DNA from: Geosiphon pyriformis uo1 | Taxonomy: Eukaryota; Fungi; Glomeromycota | Direction of reading: 5' to 3' | Assembly (NCBI GenBank): GCA_016748015.1 | Contig: JAAOMT010000466.1 | Span: 26,222 to 89,778 of the forward strand | Length of the DNA stretch: 63,557 bases | Shown: positions 5,419-57,030 of the stretch, piece after piece | How the letters are laid out: each line of letters opens with the position of its first letter | Position numbering within the stretch: position 1 is the stretch's first letter | Program-made: the position numbers and the translations under genes | The notes under the pieces: model-generated | Databases searched by the model: none | The model's input: only the letters and a program-made list of their open reading frames with translations | Told to the model about the DNA's origin: nothing

Positions 5419-6915
5419 TTATCTTTTTATGATTTGAAAAACTTCATACTCCTCGACAGAAAAATTCACCCGTTGATTTTCTGATCCAAGTAAAGCATGT
5501 TCATATCGACCTCCCTTTTGACAAAAGCAGTTTGAACTATTTTTAAAATCATTGCCACATAATCCAATATTGGCATCTCCAAAAGTGGGTCCATAAGCTA
5601 CCCCACCCCAAGGTCCGGATCCTGTAACAAACTTGCTAAGCATAGCATTTTCAGTTTTATCATCTCCAAGAGAAAAAATAAAACTTCCTTTTCCCTCCAA
5701 CCAATCATCCTTAGAGTGCCAAGATTGTGGGTTAAAGCCGCCAATTATCTGACCAGTTCCTTTCACTTTGATTACGCTAACTGTTGCTCCTTTATAATCG
5801 CATAGTCGATGAAAATCCGCTGGGGTAAATCCGTCTCGACTGCCTCGAAGTAACAATTTAAAATTATTTTCAAGTTGATTTCCAAAAGGAGTATTGTCAT
5901 CTTTGCCTTGAATCCAATGATCAAGCTGTTTTATGTTTTGCGATTTAAGAAGCTTTGTATCAATATTTGATCGAGAACAACGTAATGGCTGAGCGTCTAC
6001 AGACTTTTGATGACTACCCGGTACGAGATAATGATGTAAAAGATCTTCATATAAAGTTCCAGGTAAGATTCTCGCAAATGGTTTTACTTTGTGATAGAAA
6101 TCAACTGAAGATATGTTAAAGAACCGGATTAAAGGTAGAAGCCTTTCGATGGATTCCTTAAAGGCGTTAAAGTTTTCATCTGTCCAATAAAGAACTTTTT
6201 TCGTCTGAATATCGCTATCCAATTTAGCAACTCCCCATTCTACAATCTTTTCCCATATTTCAGTTTCTTCCATATTTATTTCATCCTGGGTTAAATTGAG
6301 ACAAGAGCATTTTCACTAAGGGAGGTAAAATCTTGCGAGTTGAAGACTATAGCTGGATTTTCAACAGCTATTTCGGTGCAGAATTTTTGTAACTTTTTGA
6401 AAGAATCATGCATAAATGAAGTTTTCTGCAAAATAGCAAAATTTTTTTCTAGCTCTTTTGCACGGTGTTCAATCAAATAGTCTTCAAGATGATCAATAAT
6501 GTTTTCTAGAATAAGCTCATCAGCGGTAACAAGCAATTCTAAAATGGTAGGTACTTCATGTTTATCAAGAGAAATCTCGCCATTATAAATGTATCTGCAG
6601 GAAAACAAAACAGTGAATCTTATCTTGCCCCAAATATTCGAAGGAAATGAAAACCCTTACCTGAGAATTATTTCAAAAATCTTTGGTGAGATATTAGGTT
6701 TAGGGAAGATAATGATATTCTTTTCCCTTTTAATCCAATTGCTAGAGTGCGACAGCAAAATATGGTGATCTTGCTGCTAAAATTTGGGAATGAGCATGAA
6801 AAGTTCTAATATTGGGCGCTTCGCCAACTATAATTCTAATATCAGTGAACTTCTGACTGTTAAATAAATTCCCAAAATCATTGGATAAAGCGTGAAAGTA
6901 TTGTTGGGGTGACAT
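5419..6915 (-). pseudogene. BTB/POZ-BACK-TLDc protein, copy A (frameshifted)
   Basis: Nearly identical to 15008-16507 over BTB/BACK, with an intron at 6595-6660 (GTAAGG..TGCAG). A 2-nt deletion near 6745 (GCACTCTAG vs GCACTCTCTAG) and a 1-nt deletion near 6293 (ATTTAA vs ATTTTAA) each create a stop. TLDc motifs LLLRGSRDGF, FHRLCD, IIGGFNP, GPTFG and EYEVFQI are intact. Confidence 0.85.
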
Positions 6916-8872: not shown

Positions 8873-9790
8873 CTAATTGAATTTCCTCCCCCTGGTTTTC
8901 AATATGCGGTGTGAGAACTTTTTACCCCTTTCTTTAACGATCTTAATTTCATTATCGGTAAATTTTCGAATGGCTGAGGGGTGAAGGGTGAAGGATCTAA
9001 TTCGTTGTATCTTATCTCTACCTATACCTTCGGTACTAAAAATCCTGTAAGTATTTAAAGCCGAGCGTTTTCTCTTGTTGAAGATATTACGAGCAGTATC
9101 GGATGGAAACTGACGTCTAATTTCATTATTGAGCATAATCTTGGCGGAACGAAGTGGATTTTTAGACTTTAGCTCTACCGACTTGTCCTCTAATGCTTTT
9201 CCAAGAAGGTAATATGAGTCAAGAATTTCGTATTTTGTGCGGGTCATCTCACGTGTTTGTTTTTCGAGATTCTTCTCAGCTTTAAGGATTTTGTCGTGTA
9301 GTTTAGGGAAATTCATTTGTGGAATTGAGGAATTCTACCTTCTCATTTTCTGGATCAGGTAATTGAGCAAAGACTATTGGCCAAAGAGATAATTCTCTGA
9401 GAAACTTTTCCACTTTCCAGTTTTTTTCTTGTGGGTTTAAGTCGTCATCATCATCATCAAGATAGATAGATTGACGACAACGAGGACAATCCGGGTTTTT
9501 CTTTAGAGAGTTGACAATGCATTTAAGATGGAAGGTATGTTTACAGGTTAATTTCGCGATCGGTTCCAAGTTGGCTCCATTGGGTTCCTATAATGGATCT
9601 GAATCGTTGCATAAAGAGCACGTTTCAGGAGGCGTTTTGCGAGGTTGTCGATCCAGTGGCTTGAGCGATATTGCCATCATCCGGTGAATTAGGCGTTGCC
9701 CGTATATTGAGACCCAAATATTTCTTCATCGATGCTAAATGGCATATACTGCGTTTGCGAAGCGGTGGGATTGGATCTTTCTGTTTCCAT
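8873..9790 (-). pseudogene. RING-H2 finger protein with a helical C-terminal domain
   Basis: CSLC..(in-frame TAG)..LTCKHTFHLKC..CPRC gives the C3H2C3 RING-H2 pattern. A frameshift near 9310 joins ORF 9303-9569 to ORF 8873-9316 (YYLLGKALE..IGRDKIQRIRSF). Confidence 0.7.
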
Positions 9791-15007: not shown

Positions 15008-16507
15008 ATGTCACCCCAACAATACTTTCACGCTTTATCTAATGATTTTGGGAATTTATTTAACAGTCAGAAGTTCACTGATATTAGAATTATAGTTGGC
15101 GAAGCGCCCAATATTAGAACTTTTCATGCTCATTCCCAAATTTTAGCAGCAAGATCACCATATTTTGCTGTCGCACTCTCTAGAAATTGGATTAAAAGGG
15201 AAAATAATATCATTATCTTCCCTAAACCCAATATTTCACCAAAGATTTTTGAAATAATTCTCAGGTTAGGGTTTTCATTTCCTTCGATTATTTTGACCAA
15301 CATAAGATTCACTGTTTTGTTTTCCTGTAGATACATTTATAATGGCGAGATTTCTCTTGATAAACATGAAGTACCTACCATTTTAGAATTGCTTGTTACC
15401 GCTGATGAGCTTATTCTAGAAAACATAATTGATCATCTTGAAGACTATTTGATTGAACACCGTGCAAAAGAGCTAGAAAAAAATTTTGCTATTTTGCAGA
15501 AAACTTCATTTATGCATGATTCTTTCAAAAAGTTACAAAAATTCTGCACCGAAATAGCTGCTGAAAATCCAGCTATAGTCTTCAACTCGCAAGATTTTAC
15601 CTCCCTTAGTGAAAATGCTCTTGTCTCAATTTTAACCCAGGATGAAATAAATATAGAAGAATCTGAAATATGGGAAAAGATTGTAGAATGGGGAGTTGCT
15701 AAATTGGATAGCGATATTCAGACGAAAAAAGTTCTTTACTGGACAGATGAAAACTTTAACGCCTTTAAGGAATCCATCGAAAGGCTTCTACCTTTAATCC
15801 GCTTCTTTCACATATCTTCAGTTGACTTCTATCACAAAGTAAAACCATTTGCGAGAATCTTACCTGGAACTTTATATGAAGATCTTTTGCATCATTATCT
15901 CGTACCGGGTAGTCATCAAAAGTCTGTAGACGCTCAGCCATTACGTTGTTCTCAATCAAATATTGATTCAAAGCTTCTTCGATCGTATAATATAAGACAG
16001 CTTAATCATTGGATTCAAGGGAAAGACAAAAATATTCCTTTTGAAGGTCAACTTGGAAATGATTTTAAGTTATTACTTCGAGGCAGTCGAGACGGATTTA
16101 CTCCAGCGGATTTTCATCGATTATGCAATGATAAAGGAGCAACAGTTAGCGTAATCAAAGTGAAAGGAACTGGTCAGATAATTGGCGGCTTTAACCCACA
16201 ATCTTGGCACTCTAAGGATGATTGGTTGGAGGGAAAAGGAAGTTTTATTTTTTCTCTTGGAGATGATAAAACTGAAAATGCTATACTTAGCAAGTTTGTT
16301 ACAGGATATGGACCTTATGGTGGGCCAAATTGTGGGCCCTATTTTGGAAATGCCAATATGAGATTGTTTGGCAATGATTTTAAAAATAATTCAGAGTGCG
16401 CTTGTCAAAAGACAAGTTATTATGAGCATGCTTTACTTGGATCAGAAAATCAACGGGTGAAGTTTTCTGTCGAGGAGTATGAAGTTTTTCAAATCATAAA
16501 AAGATAA
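15008..16507 (+). CDS. BTB/POZ-BACK-TLDc domain protein, copy B (intact; 477 aa after removing intron 15265-15330)
   Basis: BTB (DIRIIVG..FHAHSQILAARSPYF..IFEIILRYIYNG), BACK (FKKLQKFC..FNSQDFTSL..EIWEKIVEWG..LPLIRF) and TLDc (LLLRGSRDGF..IIGGFNP..GPYFG..VEEYEVFQI). The 66-nt GT..TAG intron is at the same position as in copies A and D. Confidence 0.93.
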   Translation: MSPQQYFHALSNDFGNLFNSQKFTDIRIIVGEAPNIRTFHAHSQILAARSPYFAVALSRNWIKRENNIIIFPKPNISPKIFEIILRLGFSFPSIILTNIRFTVLFSCRYIYNGEISLDKHEVPTILELLVTADELILENIIDHLEDYLIEHRAKELEKNFAILQKTSFMHDSFKKLQKFCTEIAAENPAIVFNSQDFTSLSENALVSILTQDEINIEESEIWEKIVEWGVAKLDSDIQTKKVLYWTDENFNAFKESIERLLPLIRFFHISSVDFYHKVKPFARILPGTLYEDLLHHYLVPGSHQKSVDAQPLRCSQSNIDSKLLRSYNIRQLNHWIQGKDKNIPFEGQLGNDFKLLLRGSRDGFTPADFHRLCNDKGATVSVIKVKGTGQIIGGFNPQSWHSKDDWLEGKGSFIFSLGDDKTENAILSKFVTGYGPYGGPNCGPYFGNANMRLFGNDFKNNSECACQKTSYYEHALLGSENQRVKFSVEEYEVFQIIKR

Positions 16508-20430: not shown

Positions 20431-20659
20431 CGACATTAAGATATAAAATTTTTAATTTATATTTAAAATATTGAAGTTTTTAAGATTATATATTAGAGTT
20501 CCTTAAAAATTTTTTATCATCAATATATTACTTTTATCTATGAATCTTTGAAATTAGAAAGCTTTCATGATTATAAGTTATTAACCTATTGAAAAGTAAT
20601 TAACAAAAAACTTGTATCTAATTTTATATTTGCTATCATCTTTAATTTAATAATATGAC

Positions 20660-21045
20660 ATTTCTTTTAAATCTCTAATGCATTTCTGTCCAAATATTAT
20701 TTAAATTGATTAATCAACATTTTAAAACAAGATTTAAGAAATTTTAGAAATATTAGCTTTGCAAATTTTTATAAACTATATTTTAAATTTTTTAATAAAT
20801 TACATTGATAATATTTTAATAAATTATATATATAATGTAATAAGTAATTTTCTAAACTTATTTTAAAATTTTTTTTAATTATCAAAATATTGAATAAAAA
20901 AAAGAAAGTTAGTAATTGTAAAAAATTCATTAATTAACTAAAATATCTAAAAAAAACCAAATTAATTTTAATTTGTTTTTTGAAAAATTAATTATAAGGT
21001 GACATTATATCATGAGGAAAAATAATTATAAATAATATCAAAATA
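20660..21045 (+). repeat. Dispersed AT-rich repeat, second copy at ~36630-36968
   Basis: Shared colinear strings TAATGCA.TTCT.TCCAAATA, AAAATATCTAAAAAAAACCAAATTA and TCATGAGGAAAAAT.ATTA.AAATAATAT. Confidence 0.7.
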
Positions 21046-21069
21046 AACTATTTTAATCAAATACACAAA

Positions 21070-22104
21070 AAATAAAAAATATTATCGATTAATATTAATT
21101 TTCTGATCGTAAAATAATCAAATTTATATAATTTATGTAATAAATGTAGTTAAAATATATGTTACAAAATATCTAAATTGTAATTCATTTTAAATGCTTT
21201 TTTGAGTGAAATTTAACCGCTATTAATTTGAAATGGTATTTAATTATTTATTGAAAAAATTATTCAAAATAAATTTTATTTCAAAATTTTTGAATCAATG
21301 AACTTTTAATCTTTTATTTATTTAATACATTTTTTAAAATTGTATTGTGAATATTTGAAATTATTTAAATATTTTTTATAATTAAAAAATTATGCTGAAA
21401 TAAAAAAAAATCCCTCTTATTTTTAATATTTATAATAAATAATTCTGTTTGAAATAGACAAAATCACTGATGTAACTGTCCTAAAAGGAGTATTAGCACA
21501 GCAAAATACTAATGATTACCGCTGCTTGCCCTTTGCTTTGCTCGGTATTATCGGGAATTTAGTAGCGGACGGAATAGTATTTTTTTGGTCATAGTGTTTG
21601 GAGAATTTCCGGTGCGTTGGTTATCACCTAAAGTATGAGTATTGATGCACTGTCATAAATTTAGCTTAGAAAAATTCAGCAGATAGTGTACCTAACATGC
21701 TTTTCGCATGCTTATACGGCTAAATATTTAGTAGGGGGATTATTAAAGTTTAAGCCTCTTTTCTCATTGACACCATCTATAACTGAATTCCTCTAATTCT
21801 TGACTAGTTAAAGGAGCAATGATAATTTGCCCGTAATTATTAATTTTGCCACTAGTAGCTAGAATTTTCGATTTCGATTTTTTGCTTTTTATAACTTGAT
21901 TTGATTTAATTTACTTTTAAATTGGTATCAGACGGGAAGTCCAAAAAGGGCTTCTATTTGAATAAGAAATGAAAGTGGTTCTTTTTTTTCTTCCTTTACA
22001 TTTGCATCATAATCTATATGGAAGATAAATCATAAATTCCGTATTAATTTGAAAAAAAAGTGCAGATTCGATATTGTTCTATTGTTCATACTAATTTGGA
22101 TAAA
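21070..22104 (+). repeat. ~1 kb direct segmental duplication, partner at ~50235-51247
   Basis: High identity over 21430-22104 vs 50550-51247 (e.g. GCTGCTTGCCCTTTGCTTTGCTCGGTATTATCGGGAATTTAGTAGCGGACGG) and lower identity on the left. The minus strand looks like a decayed gene end. Confidence 0.92.
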
Positions 22105-33900: not shown

Positions 33901-36900
33901 AATTTACAATTTTAAGCTTTTTTCTTTTTTAATTTTTATAATTACGACCAAATTAAATACTACTTTTTTTTATAGTAATTAAAAAACAATTACTTAAAAA
34001 GCATTATTAATAATAAAAACAGCTAAATAGAATATGATAAAATGGTTTTATAAATAAAACAACTATTAGTTAGTTTATAAACACTTTTTTGTTTTTAATT
34101 AAAAGTTTATTTTCTGTTAAAGTTTTCTATTAAAACCAGTTTTGGTATTAATTGTAAAAAGCTCTAAGTTTTTAATTCTAAACTAATAGTCAAGCCATTA
34201 TTTTTTATTGTTATCTTTAATATTATTTTCAAATAGCCAAAAAATATAGTCAAAAAACAACTACCAACTCTTATCTTATTAGAAATAACTAAATTTAAGA
34301 AAAATAATTTTTCAAAATTTTTAAATCTTTGATATTAAATTTTTTAAAAACGTTAAATTACTATTACTGTTTCAAATTTTGCTTCTTTTTTTTTAAGTTA
34401 TAAAAATTTAACTTTTTATTTTTTTGGTATTTTTATCAATTCTGTATTATTAACATTAATTAAAATAATTTGTTTAGATTTAACTGTAAAAAACAACAGC
34501 TATAATATATTTATTAAGATAAATACAAATTAACAAATAATTGTGTTACTTAATATAACTATTTTAAAAAGATTATTATTAATTAAAAAATTAAACAAGT
34601 TGTTTTTTAATACATATTTTTAATTAATTACATTATAAAATTATTTAACTTAAAAATTAGATTATAATATAAATTTTAAACCTATTTTTTTTTAAAATAT
34701 ACTGTTAATTTTATAATATATAAAATACCAATATTAATTCTCAAAGAAATTTTAAATATGTGGTTTTTATTTAGATGTTTAATATTTTTATAAGATTATA
34801 TTTGCTTATATTAAAACTGTATTTTAGCTGTTATCTAATTTTATTAATAGTAAAATTATTATTATAGTTAAAACTTTATATTATTTATTTAGTTATTCTA
34901 TTTTTAAAAGTAATTGCTAATATAATTATTAATTTAATCAATAACTTAATCAATAACTTAATTATTATCTTAATTTTTAATCAAATTATTACTGTAATTA
35001 TTAATTTGATTATTGATTTTTTTAAGAATATATAAATAAAATTCTTAGGAATATAAAAATTTATTCACACTTAAATTAATTAATTTAAATAAAAATTAAT
35101 ACAATAATATCAATTTTTTTTCTTTTTTTTATGTTTTTTCTTTTTTTTTCTTAATTTGTATAATTTACTAAAAAATACAACCATTATCTATTATTAAATT
35201 ATAAAAATATTGAAATAAAACACATAATTATAACAGCTGATTTTTTGTTAATAGTAAAAACTTTTAAATTTTTTTGTTATTTTTTGAAAAGAATAGTGAT
35301 TAGAATATTTATAAAATTAATCTTGCAAATTAAGTTCTTACAAATTTAATTCACTTATTAAGTTGAATTATTTTTTTAATTATTTTTATTTTCATAAAAT
35401 ACTGTTTTTTTGTTAATTATTAGCAAATTATCTTTAATTATAATATTATTAAGATTAAGTTTTTTATATAAAATTGCATTTTAAAATTTTTTTAATATTA
35501 TTATTAAAAAATACTTTTAAGTATTTAGCAAAATTAATATTATTAAATTACTAAATTTGTTTCTGTTTACTAGTTAACTTTAATAAAAAGATATTTTTAA
35601 AATAAAATTAATAATATAATTACTTAGATATATGATTAAACATATTTTGTTTTGTAATTATCTAATTACATTTATTATTAAAAAGCTATTATTGTTTTTT
35701 TAAGTTTTAAAAATTTTTGAATATTACTGTAATTAATACTAATACTTCAAAAATTTTGTATTTAATAAAAAATGTTTAAATATTAATATAATTTGAATTT
35801 ATTTTATAAAACTGCTTTTTTTGCTTTAGCTAAGCTTATTTTTAAGCTACTTATTATGTTTAATATTGTGATAAATTGTTTTATTAATTCAGTTTTTTAT
35901 ATATAAACTATTATTTAATTTTTTATGTTTTAATTTGTAATACTTAATAAATATTTTGTATTTAGATTAGATTTTTACAAAATTTTAATACAATTAATAA
36001 TGAACCAATTAATTTTTTGTAATATAAAACTATTTATTTATTGGTTATTAAAGACAAATCCAATGTAAAAATTAGTTTTTTTTAAAATTCCAAATTGAAA
36101 AATTTAATAATCTGTTTGTTAATTTAATACATATTAATAAAATAAAAACAAAATACATAATGTAAATAAGTTTTTAATAAGTAATAATACATTAATTGTT
36201 TGTTGGTTTTATAAAATTTGCAAACTATAAGATAATATTTAACAAAAAAAACAGAATTTGATTGAGTAAATATGTTTAAAAAATATTGATGCAAATTATT
36301 TTATTAGTAAAATAGTTGTGAAAAACAATTTTTGGTTTTTAAGTTTGTTTAGTATAAATAGTTAATTATGTTTATTATAAACTTATATATAATAGAAAAT
36401 TAAACTTAATTAAGTAATAAAAAATTTGATTAATAGCAAAAATTTTACAAATTTAATTTAACTTAATTGAATTTTATTGAACTGTTTAAATTTACTTAAA
36501 ATGCTTAAATTTTGCTTGAACTAATTAAATTTTATTAAAATTCTATTGTTACATATTTTGAAATATTGTATATGATTTACATATAGAATTTATTTACTCT
36601 TTATAGATTTTTAATTTAATATATAATAATTCTTTTTAAATTTGTAATGCACTTCTATCCAAATAATATTCAAAATAATTATTAAACATTTATAAACAAA
36701 TTTTTGAAATTTTAGTATTTTTAGCTTTAAAATTTAACATACTATATATTTTTATATATTTAATGTAATATTTAATTATCTAAACTAATTTAAAAAAATT
36801 TTTAATTAACAAAAATGCTGAATAAAAAAATAAAGAGTTAGTAATTATAATAAAATTTTTAATCAACAAAAATATCTAAAAAAAACCAAATTATTATTAA

Positions 36901-39900
36901 TTTGCTTTTTAAAAAACTAATGAAAATTGGTATTATTTCATGAGGAAAAATTATTACAAATAATATTAATTTAATTAATAACTTAATTGTTAACTTAAAT
37001 TATTAATTTAATTATTATCCTTTTGGAGTTTAAAATTTTTTAACTTCAAATTTGTTATTTCTTTTAATTTAAAAAGACGAAGATGATTTTTTACTACAGC
37101 TCAGAATAGTTAGCTCAAAATAATATTCAAGTAACAATACATAAAAAACATTATGAATATTAAGATATTCAGACAATTTTAATTCATAAAAAACTGAATT
37201 TATTTGCCGAACTATTGAAAAAAATCTTAGTCTCTTATAGTTTAATTTTTCACAAAACTTAGTTTTTTTGATATTTCAATATAAAGGTCATATTTTTTTG
37301 TCTATTCTAAATATTAAAGCTCTTTCTTTTTATTTATCTGTTTTTTATTTATATTTGAAATTCAAATTCTCTTGAATTTTTTTGTTTAGATAATGTGGTT
37401 TTTAGCAAAAAAAATTAATATTTCTTTAACTATTGAAAAACTAAAATATATATTTTATTTGTAATTAACAAAAAATGATGTTATTGTATGCAAACTCTGT
37501 TAATAACAATAAGTTGAGCCAATTATCTTGTTAATAATTAACCACAAATATTGCTCTAAGATTTAAGAAATCTATTCAATTTGACTATTGGTTTAAGAAT
37601 AGAAAGAAGATCTAAATGTTTAAGAATATGAAACAAATTGCATTTCATAATTCAAACTATTTTATCTGGAAAACTGTAAAGTTTAACAATATTTTGAAAA
37701 ATTGATTAGGTAGTGTTCTCAAAAATTATAGCTTTTGTACAAAATATAAAATAATTATTTTGATTAATTAATTTACCACAACAAAAATAAGTTTTTCTTA
37801 TTTATTATAAACAAATTTTTTATAAAATTTATTAAAATAGATTTCTAAAAACATTCTAAAATAAATAATAAATGTAACACTCCAAAAGATTTTTAAAGAA
37901 AAACTTTAAATCTAAAACAAATATTACAAAATTTTATGTAATTTTTAATAAATTAACACTGTTATAGCGACTATTAATATTTTTTACAACCAATTTGACT
38001 ATTTTATTGACTTTAAAATGGCCAATACGTCAATTATGGTGATTTTTTTATTTAAACTTTGATAGAAAACCAACAATAAGAAGATTATTTATTGTATTCT
38101 AAGTTTATATATTTGTAATTATAAATCTTTTAATTGTTTTAAAAAGTTCTAAATTTAAACATACAATTAAAATAGCTGCAATTTTGAATTGTTTAGACAT
38201 TAATAAAATTATTTGTTTTTAATTATAAATTTTCTTTTTTTTAGGTTTAAATTCTGAGCAATATAAAAAAACATCTATTGTATTCTATAATATATAAGAA
38301 TAATAAGAAATCACAAAATTAAAATCAGTCATAAGAATAAATTATTAAGCTTAATATTAATTAAACATTCTAGTTATTATAAAATATTAAAAGTTTTTAT
38401 AATTAATTTTCTAAGCAAAAAACATAAATGTATAAAAAATAAAAAAGTATAAACATTTAGTAGATCCAAACTATAATAATAATGCTGCCATAATGCCAAA
38501 ATTTTTATTTTTATTGTATATAACTTATTAAAATCAACATAAATTAAATCAAAAACTATAATAAAAACTTTTTTTAAAACTTAAAATATAATATTAACTT
38601 GTAAAATTCACTTAAATATTCTATTTTTTTATGTTAAAATTATTAATAGAATGGTAATTTAAGATAATCTAATAAAATTTTCAACATTTTTTATATAATA
38701 AGATGTTATTTTAAAACTATTTAAATTTATAAAATATCTTCTAAAAAAAATATATACTTTAAAACTTAACTTAAAATTAATTAAATTTACATCTTTTTAA
38801 ATTGGTATATAATTTGTATTGTCTTAAATATTTAAAACTATATATATATGTTTTTACAATTTTTTTAATTTTTAAAATAGATTAAAATATTGTTAAAATA
38901 ACATATTACAAAATAATTCAAATAATATTGTTTATTAAAAATTAAAAAACAATATATGTATTTATTAATCCAAATAATATTATTAAATATTAAAAATTAT
39001 CATAATATGTTCAAAAGACTATTTTTAATTTATTTTTTAGATTTATATTAAATTATAGACATTGCATAAATTAATTTTTATAAACATCTAAGTTGTACAT
39101 AATTAATCCAAAAAATAAAATATTAAAGTAATAAATAATAATTTTTATTATAATTTAATTAAAGTTTTAGTAGTTAATACACAACTTAAGAAATTATTTT
39201 TTTAATAAAAAATATTAAATCATTTGCTAAAAATCTTTGCAAATCTCTAATATTTAAATAATAATTTACACTTTAATTTTTTATCTGTTGTAAAAATAAT
39301 AGAATAAATTAGTTAAAAAAATTTAAGAAACAATTGATATATTAAAAAAAATATCCTAACAAATTTTTATTGGTATTATATTTTATTCTAAAATATTGGT
39401 TAATTTAATTGTGTAAGTTTTCTAATTAATTATTAAGTTTTTTATTTAATAATTTCTAGAAATAAGTTATTAATAATAACTTTTAATAATATATAATAAT
39501 ATTTATTTATTATTAGTATATTTTATATATTTGTAAATTTTTATTACTAAAACAAAAATAATGTCAAACTTAATTTAAAAATCTAAAGCTTAAAAAAATA
39601 ATTAAAACTTAAAATAAAATTAAATATAAAACAAAAAATTTTATTAAAACCAAAATTACTATTAAATACTTAGCAAAATTCAAAACTTATTATAACAAAG
39701 CCTATAGAATTTAAATTAGAATTTTTAATAAAAACTAAATTTACAATTTTCTGATTTAAGTTATTAACAAAATTTTGAAAACATAAAACAAAAGCTAAAT
39801 ATCTAAATACATAGTTTTTATTGTATTTAATTTAGTTATTTTTTAATTTTATTTAAAAACCAGTTATTATAACAAAAAACATTTTTAATAACTTTATTAA

Positions 39901-40150: not shown

Positions 40151-41254
40151 TTCTATGAAAATTAGTTAATAAGTTTCTAAATTAATTAGGTAATAATGAG
40201 AATAAAGTTGAATAACAAACCAAATCTGATTGATAAAATCCTAAATTTTTTTAGGCAATTGATTTTGAGTTTGAAAGCTATAAACTAAGTCGAAAATAAT
40301 TTAATCTACTTTTAACTAGACAAGAAACTTCTGTAGATCGGTATTTTTCTACTGAATTACCTACAAAGCTTGCATGACTTTAATATGAGTAAATAAAACT
40401 GTTATAAAAAAACAAGAAGAACTAATAGAACTATATAATAGATAAATAAATAGCTAATCAAAAAATAGTTATTCATTAATCTAATTTTTTCTTATATATC
40501 TGAATCTTTCTTCCAAATCTTAATATTTTACAAACTTGAAACAATAGTTGGCCTAGTTCTTGATATAAAAGTATATGATTCTGAAAAATATTTGGAAATA
40601 TAATTGAAATTGCTATTATTATAATAATATTAATAATTCAATGTTTTATAAGAAAGTAAAATTTTTAGAGGATTTTAAGCTTTAAAGTAAATTAAATATT
40701 TAATAACAATTATTCATTTATGTTAATAGTTTTATTAGATTATTTTTTCGAAAATGAAAAATGAGATTTTAAAAGAACAGAGCAAAAATAGAATCTTACT
40801 AATAATTTGAAAACCATTTTCAATTGTTTTCTGCTGAATAATAGAAATTTCAATCACAGTCAATAAAACGAAACTAACTTGATATCAAAACATATTGGTT
40901 AATAAAAATATATATTCTTTAAAAAACTTTTACTTTTTTCGTGTCTTTAATATTTATTCAAGCATTTATTATTATTATTATTGCATCATAAAAAAGTAAA
41001 CCAGCTTCTAAAATCTATATTTTAAGGTAGCAGTATCCATTTTAAAGATTTATTTCTAATGCTGTCAGCTAAAGAGCATTTATAGTTTTAGCCTGTAATA
41101 AACCTAAGCTTTAGAAATAAGAAGTTGTTTGATAAAGTCTCTTTTAAGGTTTTTTGATATCTAAATAGAAAAGCGTTATTCTTTTGACTTAATTGGAGGG
41201 GGCTTAGACACACAACCTTCAGACAGTGTATAAATAAATTAAATAAAAGGAAAT

Positions 41255-41645
41255 TTATCTTTTATGATTTGAAAAACTTCATACTCGGCAGAAAAATAAA
41301 CAGCTCCATTTCCTAACCCAAATAAAGCATGCTCATAATAACCTGTCTTTTGACAAGCGCACTCTGAACTATTTTTAAAATCATTGCCATATAATTCAAT
41401 ACTGACATCTCCAAAAGTGGGTTCATAATTATAACAACTATAAGGTCCAAATCTTGTAACAAATTTGCTAAGTATAGCATTTTCAGTTTTATCATCTCCA
41501 AGAGAAAAAAAAAACTTCTTTCTCCATTTAAATGTTTATTTAGAGAGTGCCAAGATTTCGGGTTAAAGTCACCAATTATCTGACCAGTTCCTTTCACCTT
41601 GATTATGCTAATTTTTGCTCCTTTATCATAACAACATAATCAATA
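41255..41645 (-). pseudogene. TLDc-only 3' fragment of the BTB-BACK-TLDc family, copy C
   Basis: Reads DKGAKISIIKVKGTGQIIGDFNPKSWHSLNKHLNGERS..SKFVTRFGPYSCYNYEPTFGDVSIELYGNDFKNSSECACQKTGYYEHALFG..EYEVFQII. It has frameshifts near 41510 and 41260 and is 5'-truncated at ~41645. It shares the 3' flank of the other copies. Confidence 0.88.
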
Positions 41646-42200: not shown

Positions 42201-43294
42201 AAATCGAAGAAACAAATAAATTTCCCCGAATATTAAATTACCATATGGTGTTTGAGATAGTGCTGCTGGTATAAGAAACAATCTTATTTTTTTCTTCATA
42301 TATAATGGACAAACTGAATATCTTCTTGTTAATATATTCCCTGTGGATATGGTCACACTGCAAATACAGCCAAATATTTCCTTTACTGGAATGAAACCAA
42401 GGTGTGACACTTCATTTGCTCAGTTTTCAGGATCAAACGCGTTTTTTCTAAGTAAAAATTCTGCAATTTTTTGAAAAAATTATGCCTAATTATATTAATC
42501 TCTAAATTTATGGTGGATACCTGTTACAAGATATGTCACCAGCATGTGGCAATACCCTGAACACACTCCAAGTTTTCAATATGACATTTCATAATTTGAC
42601 TCAAGAACACAAAATTGTAATTAATATTCCTTCCAATGATTTCAAACTGCCAAAAATAAACAATTTGGATATGAATGCAAAAAATAACGAAGCAGATCCA
42701 AATATTCGGAATCAAGAAATCGGTATATCTGGAGAACCATCAAATCAAGACTAAGTATCATCCAAGTCACGATTGCCAACCTGGCTATTTATTTCAGTTC
42801 TAGTTACGGCTATAGCTATCAGCTTAATATTTTTCGGTCTTTGGCTTTGCCGCAATTGAGCTTTACGACCACGAGCCTCTTTCGGAATCACCCAACTACT
42901 CTTATCACCACGTGGCCCAATACCAACAGCTAATCAAACTTTTTTAACAAGACCTCATCCATTAACCTTGTATAGTATCCCAAATATCCAAGGTGGTGAA
43001 GAAAGTCCATAACGAGGATCAGATTTTACATCAGATCATGGATTTGATTCCCCGAGGTGACAAACAAAATCAGATGAATTTGAAACGGATGATGATGACC
43101 TGGCGGTAATTGGTGAGGCCACACATGTACACACACAACCATCGTCCCGAATATCTGTTATCTTTCATCCGATCGAACAAGGAAGTAATAGTGATATGGT
43201 TGAATTGTTTGAGAACTGGAATTTAAGTGGGGGAAATTTTACAATAGCTACTGGCGGAGTAAATCGAAAGGTGATTTGTAGGATACATGTTTAA
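42201..43294 (+). pseudogene. 5'-truncated Kelch-like, single-pass membrane protein pseudogene
   Basis: Kelch-like KLPYGV*DSAAGIRNNLIFFF and NAFFL/GG segments, a transmembrane stretch WLFISVLVTAIAISLIFFGLWLC and a low-complexity tail. The in-frame stops are shared with the right-arm copy. Confidence 0.6.
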
Positions 43295-43930
43295 AATTGA
43301 TATTTAAATGGAATAGTTGAAAGAATAATTGCATGAATAGATTGTTTCTAGCGTTATATTAATATTGTATTTTTAAAAAGTTACCGATTTAAAGTAATGA
43401 TTCGATAGAATAATATTTAAAATAAGAAAAACAGAAAGTTCCTTAACTGACAGTTGTTTGGCTTTACGCTTTGAGTCTAGAATGGTATAAAAAGAAGATC
43501 AATAAAATATTGAGCCAATACGAGACAGCGCGAACCACAGAAAGCATATGCTAGTCTGGATTGCCTCCCACTTGACCAGTAGTCACGGGATACATCTCAT
43601 GCCAAGAAAAGCAAAAGTGAACGCCACAGAGAAGTTAAGACCCAGATATTCTTCTTCCCCATACTATTAGAATGAGGTATAGCACAATTGCTGTGAAACA
43701 AAAATGTGCATGTCATGGTGAACATAAAACCTGGATGACTCTTCTTCCCTATCCTATCAGTATAGGGAGAATCACCTTCGCTAATTTCTTTAAGCATTTT
43801 CCACTTTCCCGAGCACGAAGCTTATAGCGCGAAGCTTATAAGCACGAATCTCAGAAAAATGTGAAAAGATACTGACCTTTAACTCTCGTTCCAATGCTCA
43901 ACGAGTTGAACATCGACTTCTTAGTTTGGT

Positions 43931-44155
43931 GGGTAAGTGTGAGAGAGGGGTAAGTGAAAGAGAAGGGTAAATGAGAGAGAAGGGTAAGTGAAAGAGAAGG
44001 ATAGGTGTGAGAGAGGGGTAAGTGAGAGAGAAGGGAGAGAGAGATAGAATGGTAAGTGAGAGAGAAGGATAGGTGAGAGAGAGGGGTAAGTGAGAGAGAA
44101 GGGAGAGAGAGATAGAATGGTAAGTGAGAGAGAAGGATACGTGAGAGAGAGGGTA
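43931..44155 (+). repeat. Polypurine minisatellite, ~17-18-bp unit GGTAAGTGAGAGAGAAG
   Basis: About 13 units. Other copies at ~45635-45894 and, inverted, ~46457-46612 have different lengths. Confidence 0.92.
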
Positions 44156-44750
44156 TATTGTTTAACTGGCATTGAGAAAAAGAACGATAGAATCACGTTT
44201 AGTGGATTGAGTCATATGATTTCAAATCCTATAATTGGCTGAATCAAATCATGACGATTCACATCCCCCTTAAACCGTGGGACCAACATTTAAGTCAGTC
44301 CTTCCCCCTTGCCTAAAAAGTCTGATAAGAGAGCAAAATAAATGGTCGCAGCAGGCACAATCATTAAGAATATGGCGTCCATATCTCGTAATACACTAGA
44401 CTGAATAATATAAATGGCCGCAGCATAAAGAACATGGTGTTCATATTTCATAGCCGAAAGCAATAGCAAAATACAATCGAAAGCGCCTCCAAACATTAAG
44501 GCAAATTTAGTGTTCACTATTACTCGAGTCCGATAGAGCTAGAATCGTTCGCTGCATATACAAAATGAAGAGATATTAGTAGGAGCCATAAAATATATTA
44601 GCATCGTTTTCATGTTTTATTTATTTAATAAAAACTTGTAGCGAAATAAAATATAGGGTATTTTTTCTGTAAATTTTGTTTTTTCATTTAGTTAATATTG
44701 ATAATGTATTAATATATTTTGTTAAAATAAAAAAAAATTTTGATTAAAAA

Positions 44751-45246
44751 AATCAAAATCAAAAATAAACAAAAACCATATTAATGCGTCTCAGATTATA
44801 CAGGTAATTTTAAGCCATATTTATAAACAATGTTTTTTGTTTATATTTTATGATTTTGTTTCTGATTATAAAAGATAATTTAAATCGCAAAAATAAAATT
44901 TCTAGTTCAGAATTTAAAGCCTGATTTGACATCTCCATTGTCGCATTTTTGATGTTGCTGCAAGTAGTTAGTGTCCCAGTTGTTGGTGTGCTCCCACTTG
45001 CTCACGGCACGCTTCCAATAATCGCGGTAGGCAACTTTAACTAAAGTTGTTTCCGGTAATCCACCTCTTAGCATGTTTGTATTGGTGATAAAAAATGAAT
45101 TTTGTTAAGTTTAAAAAACAAATTTATTTTAATCAGAAACAAAATCATAAAAAATAAACAAAAACATTGTTTATAAATATGATTTAAAATTACCTGTATA
45201 ATCTGAGACGCATTAATATGTTTTTTGTTTATTTTTGATTTTGATT
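44751..45246. repeat. ~118-bp inverted repeats (44751-44868 / 45130-45246) around a ~260-bp core
   Basis: CATATTAATGCGTCTCAGATTATACAGGTAATTTTAA vs TTAAAATTACCTGTATAATCTGAGACGCATTAATATG. Each arm is itself partly self-complementary. Confidence 0.9.
44907..45074 (-). CDS. 55-aa small ORF of unknown function in the hairpin loop
   Basis: ATG..TGA ORF MLRGGLPETTLVKVAYRDYWKRAVSKWEHTNNWDTNYLQQHQKCDNGDVKSGFKF. It nearly coincides with the GC-richer island between the inverted repeats. Confidence 0.3.
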   Translation of the reverse strand: MLRGGLPETTLVKVAYRDYWKRAVSKWEHTNNWDTNYLQQHQKCDNGDVKSGFKF

Positions 45247-45247
45247 A

Positions 45248-46253
45248 NNNNNNNNNNNNNNNNNNNNGAAGTAAAGACCCAGACATTCTTCTTCCCCATA
45301 CTATTAGAATGAGGTATAGCACAATTGCTGTGAAACAAAAATGTGCATGTCATGATGAACATAAAACCTGGACGACTCTTCTTCCCTATCCTATCAGTAT
45401 AGGGAGAATCACCTTCGCTAATTTCTTTAAGCATTTTCCACTTTCCCGAGCACGAAGCTTATAGCGCGAAGCTTATAAGCACGAATCTCAGACCACTTTC
45501 CTACCACAATGTGTGCGCATATGTCTGATCAAAACATAGTAGGTGCTCACATCCTCTGAAAAATGTGAAAAGATACTGACCTTTAACTCTCGTTCCAATG
45601 CTCAACAAGTTGAACATCGACTTCTTAGTTTGGTGAGTAAATGAGAGAGAGGGATAAGTGAAAGAGAAGGGTAAGTGAGAGAGAAAGATAGGTAAGAGAG
45701 AGGAGTAAGTGAGAGAGAAGGGTAAGTGAAAGAGAAGGATAGGTGTGAGAGAGGGGTAAGTGAAAGAGAAGGGTTAATGAGAGAGAAGGGTAAGTGAAAG
45801 AGAAGGATAGGTGTGAGAGAGGGGTAAATGAGAGAGAAGGGAGAGAGAGATAGAATGGTAAGTGAGAGAGAAGGATAGGTGAGAGAGAGGGGTATATTGT
45901 TTAACTGGCATTGAGAAAAAGAACGATAGAATCACGTTTAGTGGATTGAGTCATATGATTTCAAATCCTATAATTGGCTGAATCAAATCATGACGATTCA
46001 CATCCCCCTTAAACCGTGGGACCAACATTTAAGTCAGTCCTTCCCCCTTGCCTAAAAAGTCTGATNNNNNNNNNNNNNNNNNNNNNNNNNNNNNNNNNNN
46101 NNNNNNNNNNNNNNNNNNNNNNNNNNNNNNNNNNNNNNNNNNNNNNNNNNNNNNNNNNNNNNNNNNNNNNNNNNNNNNNNNNNNNNNNNNNNNNNNNNNN
46201 NNNNNNNNNNNNNNNNNNNNNNNNNNNNNNNNNNNNNNNNNNNNNNNNNNNNN
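45248..46253. other. Assembly gaps at 45248-45267 and 46066-46253 (a third at 56434-56615)
   Basis: Runs of N, all inside repeated sequence. Confidence 0.99.
45268..46065 (+). repeat. Third partial copy of the arm sequence, between two N gaps
   Basis: Direct copy of ~43631-44326, but it carries the ~66-bp segment ACCACTTTCCTACCACAATGTGTGCGC.. that is present in the right arm and absent from the left arm. Confidence 0.9.
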
Positions 46254-48405
46254 GTGCCTGCTGCGACCATTTATTTTGTTCTCTTATCAGACTTTTTAGG
46301 CAAGGGGGAAGGACTGACTTAAATGTTGGTCCCACGGTTTAAGGGGGATATGAATCGTCATGATTTGATTCAGCCAATTATAGGATTTGAAATCATATGA
46401 CTCAATCCACTAAACGTGATTCTATCGTTCTTTTTCTCAATGCCAGTTAAACAATATACCCCTCTCTCTCACCTATCCTTCTCTCTCACTTACCATTCTA
46501 TCTCTCTCTCCCTTCTCTCTCACTTACCCCTCTCTCACACCTATCCTTCTCTTTCACTTACCCTTCTCTCTCATTTACCCTTCTCTTTCACTTACCCCTC
46601 TCACACTTACCCACCAAACTAAGAAGTCAATGTTCAAGTCGTTGAGATTTGGAACAAGAGTTAAAGGTCAGTATCTTTTCACATTTTTCAGAGGATGTGA
46701 GCACCTACTGTGGTTTGATCAGACATATGCGCACACATTGTGGTAGGAAAATGGTCTGAGATTCGTGCTTATAAGCTTCGCGCTATAAGCTTCGTGCTCG
46801 GGAAAGTGGAAAATGCTTAAAGAAATTTGCGAAGGTGATTCTCCCTATACTGATAGGATAGGGAAGAAGAGTCGTCCAGGTTTTATGTTCATCATGACAT
46901 GCACATTTTTGTTTCACAGCAATTGTGCTATACCTCATTCTAATAGTATGGGGAAGAAGAATGTCTGGGTCTTTACTTCTTTGTGGCGTTCACTTTTGCT
47001 TTTCTTGGCGTGAGATGTATCCCGTGACTACTGGTCAAGTGGGAGGCAATCCAGACTAGCATATGCTTTCTGTGGTTCGCGCTGTCTCGTATTGGCTCAA
47101 TATTTTATTGATCTTCTTTTTATACCATTCTAGACTCAAAGCGTAAAGCCAAACAACTGTCAGTTAAGGAACTTTCTGTTTTTCTTATTTTAAATATTAT
47201 TCTATCGAATCATTACTTTAAATCGGTAACTTTTTAAAAATACAATATTAATATAACGCTAGAAACAATCTATTCATGCAATTATTCTTTCGACTATTCC
47301 GTTTAAATATCAATTTTAAACATGTATCCTACAAATCACCTTTCGATTTACTCCGCCAGTAGCTATTGTAAAATTTCCCCCACTTAAATTCCAGTTCTCA
47401 AACAATTCAACCATATCACTATTATTTCCTTGTTCGATCGGATGAAAGATAACAGGTATTCGGGACGATGGTTGTGTGTATACATGTGTGGCCCCACCAA
47501 TTACTGCCAGATTATCATCATCTATTTTAAATTCATCTGATTTTGTTTGTCACCTCAGAGAATCAAATCCATGATCTGATGTAAAATCTGATCCTCGTTA
47601 TAGACTTTCTTCACCACCTTGGATATTTGGGATACTATACAAGATTAATGGATGAGGTCTTGTTAAAAAAGTTTGATTAGCTGTTGGTATTGGGCCATGT
47701 GGTGATAAAAGTAGTTGGGTGATTCCGAAAGTCATAAAGCTCAATTGCGACAAAGCCAAAGACTGAAAAATATTAAGCTGATAACTATAGCCATAACTAG
47801 AACTGAAATAAATATGATTAGCCAGGTTGGCAATCGTGACTTGGATGATACTTAGTCTTGATTTGATGATTCTCCAGATATACCGATTTCTTGATTTTGA
47901 ATATTTGGATCTGCTTCGTTATTTTCTGCGTTCATATCCAGATTGTTTATTTTTGGCAGTTTGAAATCGTTGGAAGGAATATTAGTTACAATTTTGTGTT
48001 CTTGAATCAAATTACGAAATGTCATATTGAAAACTTGGAGTGTGTCCAGGGTATTGCCACATGCTGGTGACATATCTTGTAACGGGCATCCACCATAAAT
48101 TTAGGGATTAATATAATTAGGCATAATTTTTTCAAAAAATGGCAGAATTTTTACTTAGGAGAAACGCGTCTGATCCTGAAAACTGAGCAAATGAAGCGTC
48201 ACACCTTGGTTTCATTCCAGTAAAGGAAATATTTGGCTGTATTTGCAGTGTGACCATATCCACAGGGAAAATATTAACAAGAGGATATCCAGTTTGTCCA
48301 TTATATACGAAGAAAAAAATAAGATTGTTTCTTACACCAGCAGCACCATCTCAAACACCATATGGTAATTTAATATTCGGGGAAATTTATTTGTTTCTTC
48401 GATTT
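46254..48405 (-). repeat. Right arm of the large inverted duplication
   Basis: Reverse complement of 42201-44358. Confidence 0.95.
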
Positions 48406-48690: not shown

Positions 48691-50234
48691 AAACCAACAA
48701 ACAATAATTTTAAATTTTAAAAAAAACTTTGTGATAAACAAACCTGCAATAGCACTATATTTATGAAAAAATAATTGAAAAATTTATTATTGTCCCACGT
48801 TTTATAATAATAGGTACAAAAATTGAAAGCTCAAAAATTGAATACCTGGCACTTTTGCAAAAGTCTTGGTTTCAAACTTCTTGAGACAAATGTAAATCAT
48901 TAAAGATAGACACTCAATGATTTAGGCTAGTTTAGCTTATGTTACATAAATAATTTAATGCTTTATGAAGAAACAGTTGAAGTCTTTCAGGATTTTTTAT
49001 GTGAAAAGAGAATTTATGAAATGCTAACATGAATGCATATCTCGTATAATTTTGAATTTTTTTTGTAATTCTGTTCGACTTCTTTCCTGTGTCTTATCCT
49101 GATAAAAAAATTTTTAACTCTTTGCAAGCAAAAATTAAATGACATGAATATTCATCTAACATTTAAATAATTTCAATTTTCTCTTATACTTGGCTTTAAT
49201 ATGAATATGAAATGTTTTAAAAATGCATAATTTTATAATTTTTGAAAAAATCATAAAAAGATATTGGTTAAAGTTTTAGCATTCAAACTTCTTTTTTATT
49301 TCAATTCTAAATATTTTTTATTGATAAAGCTTTGAGCATTTATTAATTTTTAAAAAATTCATTTTGGTTTCATTTCTTATCAACTTTTTATAATCACTAA
49401 TTTTAAAATGTGTAGTTTGAGTTCAAGTGTTTTATTTATATAATCATTTATCTGAATTTGTATAGACAGAAAACAGTAAATTAATTTTATTTGAAAATTC
49501 AGCTACACTAATTCAATAACAAAATATCATTATTATAATAAACTTGAAATTCCGTTTCAAAAATAATCTTAAATGCCTGTAAATAAAAAAACTTTGCTAT
49601 AAAACTAAGTAATTCATCAAGTAACGACATTATTCACGAAAATAAAAATTCTACAAATCTTTAAAATGTTCAAATTTATATGAAATTGGGGAATGAAGGA
49701 TTGTCAGGTAAGGTTACATTCAATTAAATCATGTCGATATTTATTATTAGGAAGTAAATAAAAGCATAGTTGTTTTTTTTACTATTGAATACAAGATATC
49801 GCTTTTATATGCAAATATTATTACTTAAGGTTAATAATATTTTTTTAATCACAATGAGATCCCTGTTTTGGGATATTTACTAGAAAACTGCTATAGGGAA
49901 AGGAAACTAGCCAAAGTTCAAGTAATTTCATTGTGTGAAAATCCAATATATTTGAGATGGACACCATATAAATAAAACTAAATAAAACTAAATCTTACAA
50001 TTTATGATCATAAGATATATATTGTAGTCTTTTAATAAATACTTCTTTTTTTAAGTTTATGATTTTTATTGAAAAAAAAACAATACTTATCGCTTAACAC
50101 TAATATCATTTTAAACTCTCAATTTATTTTTTTCATTTCTAGCTAAGATATTGGTTACTTTTAAAAGATGAATTCATAATTTTTACTTATTAACCATTAA
50201 TAAAATAAAAATAAGTTTTTTAATCACATACCTT

Positions 50235-51247
50235 AAAAGTAAAAAATATTATCTGTTCGTATTAGATTTTTATCATCGCAAAATAATCAAGTTTATTAAA
50301 TTTATATAATAAATGTAGGTGAAATATATGTTGCTTTATAGGGTGAAATTCAACCGCTATCAATTGAAATTTTATTAATTATTTATTGGAAAAATTATTT
50401 CAAAATCAATTTATTTTACAATTTATGAATAAATTAACTCTCAATCTTTTATTTAATTAATATATTTTTTACAAATTCTTTCAAATTATTTAAGTATTTC
50501 TTGAAATCAAAAAATATTGCAGAAAATAAAAAAACATCACTCTTATTTTTTAAGATTTATAATAAATAATTTTGTTTGAGATAGATAAAATCGCTGACGT
50601 AACTGTCCTAAAAAGAGTATTAGCACAGCAAAATACTAATGATTAACGCTGCTTGCCCTTTGCTTTGCTCGGTATTATCGGGAATTTAGTAGCGGACGGA
50701 ATAGTATTTTTTTGGTCATAGTGTTTGGAGAATTCCCAGTGCATTGGTTATCACCTAAAGTATAAGTATTGATGCACTGTCATAAATTTAGCTTAGAAAA
50801 TTCAGCAGATAGTGTATTTAACATGCTTTTCCCATGCTTATACGGCTAAATATTTAGTAGGGAGATTATTAAAGTTTAAGCCTCTTTTCTCATTGACACC
50901 ATCTATAACTGAATTCTTCTAATTCTTGACTAGTTAAAGGAGCAATGATAATTTGCTCGTAATTATTAATTTTGCCACTAGTAGCTAGAATTTTCGATTT
51001 CGATTTCGATTTCGATTTCGATTTTTTGCTTTTTATAACTTGATTTGATTTAATTTACTTTTAGATTGGTATCAGACGGGAAGTCCAAAAAGGGCTTCTA
51101 TGTGGATAAGAAATGAAAGTGGTTTTTTTTCCCTTCCTTTACATTTGCATCATAATCTATATGGAAGATAAATCATAAATTCCGTATTAATTTGAAAAAA
51201 AAGTGCAGATTCGATATTGTTCTATTGTTCATACTAATTTGGATAAA
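50235..51247 (+). repeat. Partner of the 21070-22104 duplication, with an expanded (TTCGAT)n
   Basis: Direct sequence match. TTCGAT occurs 5 times at ~50993-51022 vs twice at ~21867-21878. Confidence 0.92.
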
Positions 51248-56008: not shown

Positions 56009-57030
56009 TTATCTTTTTATGATTTGAAAAACTTCATACTCCTCGACAGAAAAATACACAGTTCCGTTTTCTGATCCAAGTAAAGCATGTTCATAATCAC
56101 TTGCATCTTGACAACAGCAGTGTGAACTATTTTTAAAATCATTGCCATACAATCTAATATTGACACCTCCAAAATAGGGTCCAAAATCTGGCCCACCATA
56201 AGGTCCATAACTTGAAACAAATTTGCTAAGTATAGCATTTTCGGCTTTGTCATCTCCAAGAGAAAAAATAAAACTTCTTTCTCCATTTAGCCGCTGATTC
56301 CTAGAGTGCCAAGATTGTGGGTTAAAGCCACCAATTGTCTGACCAGTTCCTTTCACTTTGATTACGCTAACTGTTGCTCCTTTATCATCGCATAATCGAT
56401 GAAAATCCGCTGGAGTAAATCCGTCTCGACTGCNNNNNNNNNNNNNNNNNNNNNNNNNNNNNNNNNNNNNNNNNNNNNNNNNNNNNNNNNNNNNNNNNNN
56501 NNNNNNNNNNNNNNNNNNNNNNNNNNNNNNNNNNNNNNNNNNNNNNNNNNNNNNNNNNNNNNNNNNNNNNNNNNNNNNNNNNNNNNNNNNNNNNNNNNNN
56601 NNNNNNNNNNNNNNNTTCTAGAATAAGCTCATCAGCGGTAACAAGCAATTCTAAAATGGTAGGTACTCCATGTTTATCAAGAGATATCTCGCCATTATAA
56701 ATATATCTGTGAAAGAAAGTAAAACATATGAATTGATATTGGCTAAAATATTTGAAGTAAATAATACCCTTACCTGAGAATTATTTCAAAAATCTTTGGT
56801 GAAATATTAGGTTTAGGGAATAATATGGTATTATTTTCCCTTTTAATCCAATTGCTAGAGAGTGCGGCAGCAAAATATGGTGATCTTGCTGCTAAAATTT
56901 GGGAATGAGCATGAAAAGTTCTGATATCGGGCGCTTCACCAACTATAATTCTAATATCAGAGAACTGCTGACTGTTAAATAAGTTCCCAAAATCATTAGA
57001 TAAAGCGTGAAAGTGTTGTTGGGGTGACAT
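56009..57030 (-). CDS. BTB/POZ-BACK-TLDc protein, copy D (interrupted by an assembly gap)
   Basis: MSPQQHFHALSNDFG.. exon 1, intron 56707-56773, YIYNGEISLDKHGVPTILELLVTADELILE, N gap 56434-56615, then an intact TLDc ending EYEVFQIIKR*. No lesion in the visible sequence. Confidence 0.8.

What the first reader, a model, noticed from the sequence alone, without database searches (positions are those of the whole stretch)
16307..16426. Hypervariable TLDc segment on an invariant BTB-BACK scaffold: candidate diversifying Cullin-3 adaptor / recognition system
Seen: copies A and B are almost identical through BTB/BACK and differ at only 1 codon in the ~57 codons just before this segment. In these 40 codons (A: 5500-5619) I count 16 amino-acid-changing codons vs 3 synonymous, and 9 of the 16 have 2-3 changed bases (TAT/TGG, CCA/GTA, GCT/TTT, TAT/CGA). 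Copies C and D vary at the same positions, while the framework GP, P.FG, GNDFKN and C.CQ is kept. Known: BTB-BACK proteins are Cullin-3 substrate adaptors, BTB families are expanded in Glomeromycotina, and nematode MATH-BTB and F-box families show this conserved-adaptor, variable-binder pattern. Inference: TLDc acts here as a diversifying substrate-recognition surface, possibly against foreign (endobacterial, viral or symbiont) proteins.
Basis: partly seen in the sequence, partly recalled or inferred. Interest (0 to 1): 0.82.

Follow-up and report, generated by a model that had tools for sequence, protein, structure and literature searches.

The report
Diversifying TLDc face on fungal adaptors
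The fungus Geosiphon pyriformis carries well over a hundred copies of a likely ubiquitin-ligase adaptor gene in which one face of the end domain (TLDc) changes about three times faster than neutral, as expected of a family that must recognise many changing, possibly foreign, targets.

Summary
The counts are right: 16 amino-acid-changing against 3 silent codons between copies A and B in 16307-16426. The window is Geosiphon pyriformis, and the genes belong to a BTB-BACK-TLDc family with at least 150 TLDc matches. Across 54 paralogues about 18 TLDc codons are under positive selection (omega about 3). The signal survives multi-nucleotide, site-rate and recombination controls, vanishes in BTB-BACK under them, and recurs in 24 Rhizophagus irregularis paralogues. 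Selected residues alternate along strands b7-b9 and fill adjacent loops, probably the surface with which the TLDc protein mEAK-7 binds V-ATPase (mapped partly by hand). Corrections: copy A has two frameshifts. The near-identical block before the segment is a recent conversion tract that hides another hypervariable loop (16214-16225). The scaffold is not invariant across the family. Best reading: Cullin-3 adaptors with a diversifying target-binding face, reshuffled by gene conversion, like nematode MATH-BTB genes. Cul3 binding, expression and targets are untested, and the phi-x-E motif is imperfect. The scan reported the same family and reading earlier on other contigs of this genome; no paper describing it was found.

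The parts
15008..15264 (+). Copy B exon 1, N-terminal part of the BTB domain
   Evidence: Pfam PF00651 E=6.7e-15; ATG and GT donor in the sequence
15265..15330 (+). 66-nt GT-AG intron, in frame and stop-free in B; same position in paralogues
15331..16507 (+). Copy B exon 2: rest of BTB, 3-box/BACK, linker, TLDc, stop; B is intact (477 aa)
15521..15709 (+). BACK domain match
   Evidence: PF07707 E=1.9e-8
15965..16495 (+). TLDc domain
   Evidence: PF07534 E=1.8e-15; model matches NCOA7/OXR2/mEAK-7 TLDc, Z 19-21, rmsd 2.0-3.7 A
15968..16072 (+). Second divergent A/B patch (codons 299-333); mostly a mosaic boundary effect, only codon 304 scores as selected
16133..16284 (+). Tract identical between A and B (codons 354-404): recent conversion or shared donor
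   Evidence: Sawyer-type test p=0.0025
16214..16225 (+).
   Evidence: aligns to mEAK-7 Lys315-Phe318
16301..16309 (+). b5-b6 loop, selected codons 410 and 412
16325..16342 (+). b6-b7 loop (418-420) and outward residue of b7 (423); 9-15 residue types per site in 54 copies
16349..16369 (+). b7-b8 loop (426, 427) and alternating residues of b8 (430, 432)
16394..16408 (+). Alternating residues of b9 (441, 443, 445) between the conserved cysteines 442 and 444
16451..16456 (+). Selected codons 460-461 just before b10
5419..6915 (-). Copy A, head-to-head with B, about 95% identical; frameshifts near 6748 and 6296 as assembled
56009..57030 (-). Copy C; assembly gap 56434-56615 in the scaffold part; TLDc is a mosaic of two other paralogues (L008 codons 337-445, L006 codons 445-474)
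41230..41633 (-). Copy D, TLDc-only pseudogene remnant with stops and frameshifts

Best explanation
B is an intact member of a large birth-and-death family of BTB-BACK-TLDc proteins. BTB-BACK probably dimerises and docks on Cullin-3 (inferred from structure). The C-terminal TLDc domain stands where Kelch or MATH stand in other adaptors and grips the target with the outer face of its second beta-sheet (b6-b9) and four adjacent loops. Selection keeps favouring new residues on that face (shown statistically), and gene conversion swaps loop-sized blocks between copies (shown), so the family holds a repertoire of specificities on a constant frame. The targets are most likely fast-changing cytoplasmic proteins of non-self or selfish origin (endobacteria, viruses, mobile elements, symbiont), marked for degradation (inferred, not shown).
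For: Architecture and fold; BTB-BACK closest to KBTBD2, KLHL11, SPOP, KEAP1; a Cullin-3 gene is in the genome. Family size. Selection, 54 TLDc copies: M2a vs M1a 2dL=300, omega 3.4 on 13% of codons; M8 vs M8a 229; with multi-nucleotide changes 206; intact genes only 172/125; codons 405-467 on their own tree 126/93, 95 with free branch lengths; with site-rate variation plus multi-hits 44 (p=3e-10) against 0 for the scaffold. Two separate sets of paralogues pick the same sites (7 shared of 10 and 16, p=1e-6). Neutral mosaic simulations 0.5-9.5. R. irregularis: 2dL 49/28, omega 3.4-4.1, same face; scaffold 0 in 11 genes. Strand alternation. Recombination. Precedent: Thomas 2006 as cited in PMC4334554.
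Against: No binding, expression or target data. The b4-preceding loop reads W-I/V-K-R-E rather than phi-x-E. Synonymous rate in the variable loops is about 1.4 times background, and the strict cross-validated test against the same codons' own dS is not significant (omega 1.5, p=0.13-0.14). Only 32 of 62 gap-free loci pass a strict intactness filter (some failures are end-alignment artefacts), and about 40% of scaffold codons fit omega=1, so constraint is loose. BTB-BACK folds also occur in non-adaptor roles; NPR1 is among the fold hits.
Confidence: 0.58

Rival explanations
1. Escape or decoy rather than recognition: the TLDc face is what a parasite effector binds (TLDc proteins regulate V-ATPase), and the copies diversify to evade it or act as baits that drag it to the ligase.
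For: Selected sites overlap the inferred V-ATPase-binding surface, while the glycine loop that contacts subunit B (mEAK-7 Gly276, here Gly341) is invariant.
Against: A bait should resemble the real V-ATPase regulator, but the family is only distantly similar to the genome's own mEAK-7-like gene; no such effector is known to me.
Confidence: 0.13
2. A variable sensor that does not use Cullin-3, for example a dimeric receptor or a self/non-self (vegetative compatibility) determinant.
For: Imperfect phi-x-E motif; loose constraint on the Geosiphon scaffold; same selection signature expected.
Against: Intact BTB plus 3-box plus BACK arrangement matching Cul3-bound adaptors; strong purifying selection on the Rhizophagus scaffold (omega 0.13 on 95% of codons).
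Confidence: 0.12
3. No adaptive diversification: relaxed selection on surface loops, locally higher mutation rate or older conversion tracts, in a decaying multicopy family.
For: Many broken copies including A; local dS 1.4 times background; cross-validated local test not significant; as a block, codons 412-451 have omega near 1.
Against: omega>1 class survives rate-variation, multi-hit and recombination controls; dN at selected codons is 2.2 times the dS of both those codons and their conserved neighbours (site choice circular); same sites in two paralogue sets and same face in another order.
Confidence: 0.09
4. Specialisation on the fungus's own proteins or on oxidative stress and V-ATPase control, for example around the photosynthetic Nostoc symbiont.
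For: TLDc proteins bind V-ATPase (PMC8608904) and TLD families are expanded in alga-hosting ciliates (PMC11834939).
Against: That ciliate family is mostly under purifying selection; a conserved self target predicts a conserved binding face; the family is also expanded and selected in Rhizophagus, which hosts no photobiont.
Confidence: 0.08

Closest known systems
Nematode MATH-BTB and F-box adaptor families (Thomas 2006, cited in PMC4334554)
   Same: Large birth-and-death family; positive selection in the target-binding domain, not in the cullin-binding domain; proposed to degrade foreign proteins.
   Different: Fungal; the variable module is TLDc, C-terminal to BTB-BACK; clear segmental exchange between copies.
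BTB-BACK-Kelch and SPOP Cullin-3 adaptors (KLHL11, KBTBD2, KEAP1, SPOP)
   Same: BTB, 3-box and BACK in the same order and fold.
   Different: TLDc in place of Kelch/MATH; phi-x-E motif imperfect; multicopy and fast-evolving.
Canonical TLDc proteins (OXR1, NCOA7, mEAK-7, yeast Oxr1/Rtc5)
   Same: Same fold (Z 14-21); core glycines and the C-terminal E-V-F strand kept.
   Different: Few conserved genes that bind V-ATPase; here the likely binding face is hypervariable and the domain is fused to BTB-BACK.
BTB/POZ high-copy genes of Glomeromycotina (bioRxiv 10.1101/2021.03.30.436303; PMC9453076)
   Same: This family is part of that known expansion; databases already annotate the BTB-BACK-TLD architecture.
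   Different: Those papers list the expansion with unknown function and do not mention TLD or selection on it.
TLD expansions of Tetrahymena utriculariae and Paramecium bursaria (PMC11834939)
   Same: Tandemly expanded TLD family in a host of photosynthetic endosymbionts.
   Different: Mostly purifying selection (2 positively selected residues), read as oxidative-stress adaptation; no BTB-BACK mentioned in the passages read.

Membership tests
BTB-BACK Cullin-3 substrate adaptor | BTB domain | tested here: met
   PF00651 above cut-off; hits to KBTBD2, KEAP1, SPOP
BTB-BACK Cullin-3 substrate adaptor | 3-box (two helices after BTB) and BACK | tested here: met
   PF07707 above cut-off; model helices 131-136 and 138-147 follow BTB; fold match to KLHL11 and KBTBD2
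BTB-BACK Cullin-3 substrate adaptor | Hydrophobic residue / phi-x-E motif in the a3-b4 loop | tested here: inconclusive
   Loop is W-I/V-K-R-E in most copies: hydrophobic residue kept, Glu displaced by two against KBTBD2, in register against KEAP1 with a one-residue gap. The phi-x-E rule itself is from my own knowledge.
BTB-BACK Cullin-3 substrate adaptor | Cullin-3 encoded in the genome | tested here: met
   L111 best matches Cullin-3, E=3e-22 against 1e-14 for Cul4; C-terminal exon only
BTB-BACK Cullin-3 substrate adaptor | Physical Cul3 binding and substrate ubiquitylation | not testable with these tools
   needs experiment
TLDc domain | TLDc fold and profile match | tested here: met
V-ATPase-regulating TLDc proteins | Conserved V-ATPase contact surface | tested here: not met
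   Equivalents of six of eight mEAK-7 contacts fall in hypervariable loops; four of the eight equivalences are hand-anchored
Rapidly diversifying adaptor family (MATH-BTB/F-box type) | Positive selection in target domain, not in cullin-binding domain | tested here: met
Rapidly diversifying adaptor family (MATH-BTB/F-box type) | Clustered copies, birth and death | tested here: met
Rapidly diversifying adaptor family (MATH-BTB/F-box type) | Foreign targets or induction by infection | not testable with these tools
Directed diversifier (DGR-like or donor-cassette conversion) | Base-specific mutagenesis or a dedicated donor | tested here: not met
   All six substitution types occur at selected codons; copy D shares only one short tract with another copy

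The most novel reading that the evidence does not exclude
Glomeromycotan fungi have an intracellular, immune-like surveillance repertoire in which the V-ATPase-binding face of TLDc was repurposed as a variable antigen-binding surface on Cullin-3 adaptors, diversified by point selection and loop shuffling, to police proteins of endobacteria, viruses or symbionts.
Probability: 0.35. Interest if true: 0.82.

Novelty: new variant of a known kind. Interest (0 to 1): 0.58.

Why it matters
The BTB expansions of arbuscular mycorrhizal fungi have been listed for years without a function. A defined set of about 18 residues on one face gives a direct test: swap them and ask whether bound proteins change. 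It would also show TLDc, known as a conserved V-ATPase-binding module, acting as a variable recognition domain, and point to how coenocytic fungi that carry bacteria in their cytoplasm (own knowledge) might control foreign proteins.

Tried and rejected
Chance clustering rejected. Recombination as sole cause rejected by simulation (9 replicates). Multi-nucleotide mutation and site-rate variation lower but do not remove the signal. Pseudogene noise rejected: intact genes alone give the same result. Directed hypermutation and copy D as a dedicated donor not supported. The cross-validated test against local dS was inconclusive. Profile alignment of the family to the second exon of the genome's mEAK-7-like gene failed, so four contact equivalences are by hand. 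Thomas 2006 itself was not held. Literature searches for BTB with TLD/TLDc in these fungi found nothing. The big protein search was not used; it was not needed.

Full report
Source and layout. The closest homologues are Geosiphon pyriformis proteins, and the assembly size (128 Mb, 792 contigs) fits the published 129 Mb, 795 scaffolds (PMC9453076). The window holds four related copies. B (15008-16507, +) is intact, 477 aa, with one 66-nt intron. A (6915-5419, -) is head-to-head with B. C (57030-56009, -) has an assembly gap. D (about 41633-41230, -) is a TLDc-only remnant. Pfam gives BTB, BACK and TLD above cut-off. The genome has at least 150 TLDc matches (lower bounds), many in clusters.

Observation. 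Three things qualify them. A carries two frameshifts as assembled. A and B also differ strongly at codons 299-333. The quiet block before the segment is a tract shared by A, B and L006 (codons 353-404) that covers codons 381-384, which are among the most variable in the family. The A/B contrast alone therefore mixes selection with mosaic history, and needed a family test.

Selection. I fetched 90 loci and built codon alignments per exon: 54 open TLDc domains, 32 genes intact in both exons. I wrote GY94 site models; the M0 likelihoods match IQ-TREE within 0.3 units. For TLDc, M2a beats M1a by 2dL=300 (omega 3.4, 13% of codons) and M8 beats M8a by 229. Allowing double and triple changes leaves 206. 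Intact genes alone give 172 and 125. The scaffold gives 10 and 3 (codons 87-290) and 4 and 0.1 (exon 1). With gamma site-rate variation and multi-hits together, TLDc keeps 44 (p=3e-10, omega 2.6) and the scaffold drops to 0. Free branch lengths do not change the result (95). Sites with posterior above 0.9: 304, 381-384, 410, 412, 418-420, 423, 426, 427, 430, 432, 441, 445, 461 (460 in the model without multi-hits). Under the harshest model only 383, 384, 427 and 461 stay above 0.9. Two disjoint paralogue sets pick overlapping sites (p=1e-6).

Weak points. dS in the variable loops is about 1.4 times background, equally at selected codons and their conserved neighbours; dN there is still 2.2 times local dS, but that site choice is circular. 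The non-circular version gives omega 1.5 and p=0.13-0.14 in each direction; ten to sixteen codons carry few silent changes, so it has little power.

Recombination. PHI is significant in most partitions (p=0.002-0.008), and 31 of 276 pairs have identity tracts at p<=0.005 against 1.4 expected. Copy C joins the L008 type (337-445) to the L006 type (445-474). Neutral data simulated on six segment-specific trees gave LRTs of 0.5-9.5, far below 206. Tree dS does not single out TLDc (4.1, 2.7, 3.6-3.8) whereas dN does. Fourteen loci have N gaps, mostly inside BTB-BACK, as expected if recent scaffolds are too alike to assemble. Some mosaics could be assembly chimeras; these cannot create new residues.

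Generality. In 24 paralogues from Rhizophagus irregularis clusters, TLDc gives 2dL 49 (28 with multi-hits), omega 3.4-4.1 on about 4% of codons, at positions equivalent to 384, 429, 441, 443, 448 and 463: the same face, mostly not the same codons. The scaffold of 11 such genes shows none. Across about 120 mostly Rhizophagus homologues, entropy at the Geosiphon-selected positions is 2.6 bits against 1.1 elsewhere (p=1e-6). The pattern is therefore not tied to the Nostoc symbiosis.

Structure. The TLDc model (pLDDT 90) matches NCOA7, OXR2 and mEAK-7. In the published topology b6-b9 form the second sheet (PMC8329711). Variability alternates along b7, b8 and b9: Tyr423 has 14 residue types between near-invariant Pro422 and invariant Phe424; 430 and 432 have 11 and 13 between hydrophobic 429 and 431; 441, 443 and 445 flank two conserved cysteines. 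I read this as the outer face of the sheet; no coordinates were available, so exposure is inferred. mEAK-7 contacts V-ATPase with Pro316, Gln317, Tyr341, Thr354, Tyr367, Lys384, Gly276 and His277 (PMC9263379). By profile alignment Pro316/Gln317 equal 382/383 (selected) and Gly276/His277 equal 341/342 (conserved) (weak at E=0.035; consistent). By hand anchoring on strands, using the mEAK-7 sequence, Tyr341, Thr354, Tyr367 and Lys384 fall in the b5-b6, b6-b7, b7-b8 and post-b9 loops, all hypervariable here. Five of eight equivalents are selected sites against 11% background; this is indicative only, since I chose four equivalents myself.

Mechanism. The full-length model of a close paralogue matches Cul3-bound KBTBD2 and KLHL11 and SPOP, with a 3-box position as described in PMC3597819. 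A Cullin-3 gene is present. The a3-b4 loop keeps its hydrophobic residue but not a clean phi-x-E. Shown: architecture, family, selection on one part of TLDc, segment exchange. Inferred: dimer on Cul3, TLDc face as target grip, foreign targets.

Comparison and novelty. It works like the nematode MATH-BTB and F-box families. It is a probable but unproven member of the BTB-BACK Cul3 adaptors, and it fails the surface test for V-ATPase-regulating TLDc proteins. The architecture is in databases and the BTB expansion is published. I found no paper on selection in this TLDc family within the searchable library, which lacks most subscription journals. Two earlier follow-ups of this scan reached the same reading on other contigs of this genome. 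I saw them after the Geosiphon tests were done, and they are not independent support.

Method note. Remote searches used references only: the window ORF that reads through the in-frame intron, exon pieces, or proteins returned by the tools. A spliced translation of B was made inside local scripts to locate copies in DNA already held; codon tests were run exon by exon. Copy A was not read through its breaks.

Verdict. Real, robust, a new variant of a known kind. Interest 0.58.

Noticed in passing
window 42201-48405: Long inverted repeat (arms 42201-43855 and 46755-48405, 96% identical) with nested repeats and N gaps near 45248 and 46066-46253; an earlier scan note calls it RIP-like.
   Followed up: no
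window 21028-22104 and 50196-51247; 20638-21041 and 36607-36969: Dispersed direct repeats (86% and 74% identical), probably mobile-element remnants.
   Followed up: no
window 8873-9316 (-): 147-aa basic ORF between copies A and B with no Pfam match.
   Followed up: partly
L091 (G000:C689:828679-832023): The genome's own mEAK-7-like TLDc gene, with the contact residues Pro316, Tyr341 and Tyr367 kept; a natural control for the family.
   Followed up: partly
loci L002, L010, L011, L016, L017, L022, L023, copy C: Assembly gaps fall inside BTB-BACK of recent copies, so the family is under-assembled and copy number is a lower bound.
   Followed up: partly
Geosiphon scaffold versus R. irregularis scaffold: About 40% of BTB-BACK codons fit omega=1 in Geosiphon against 5% in Rhizophagus; constraint on the recent Geosiphon expansion is much looser.
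   Followed up: no
ESM Atlas cluster: A BTB-BACK-TLD cluster outside these fungi (100 members, the few with a phylum are Cnidaria); the architecture may be wider than Glomeromycotina.
   Followed up: no
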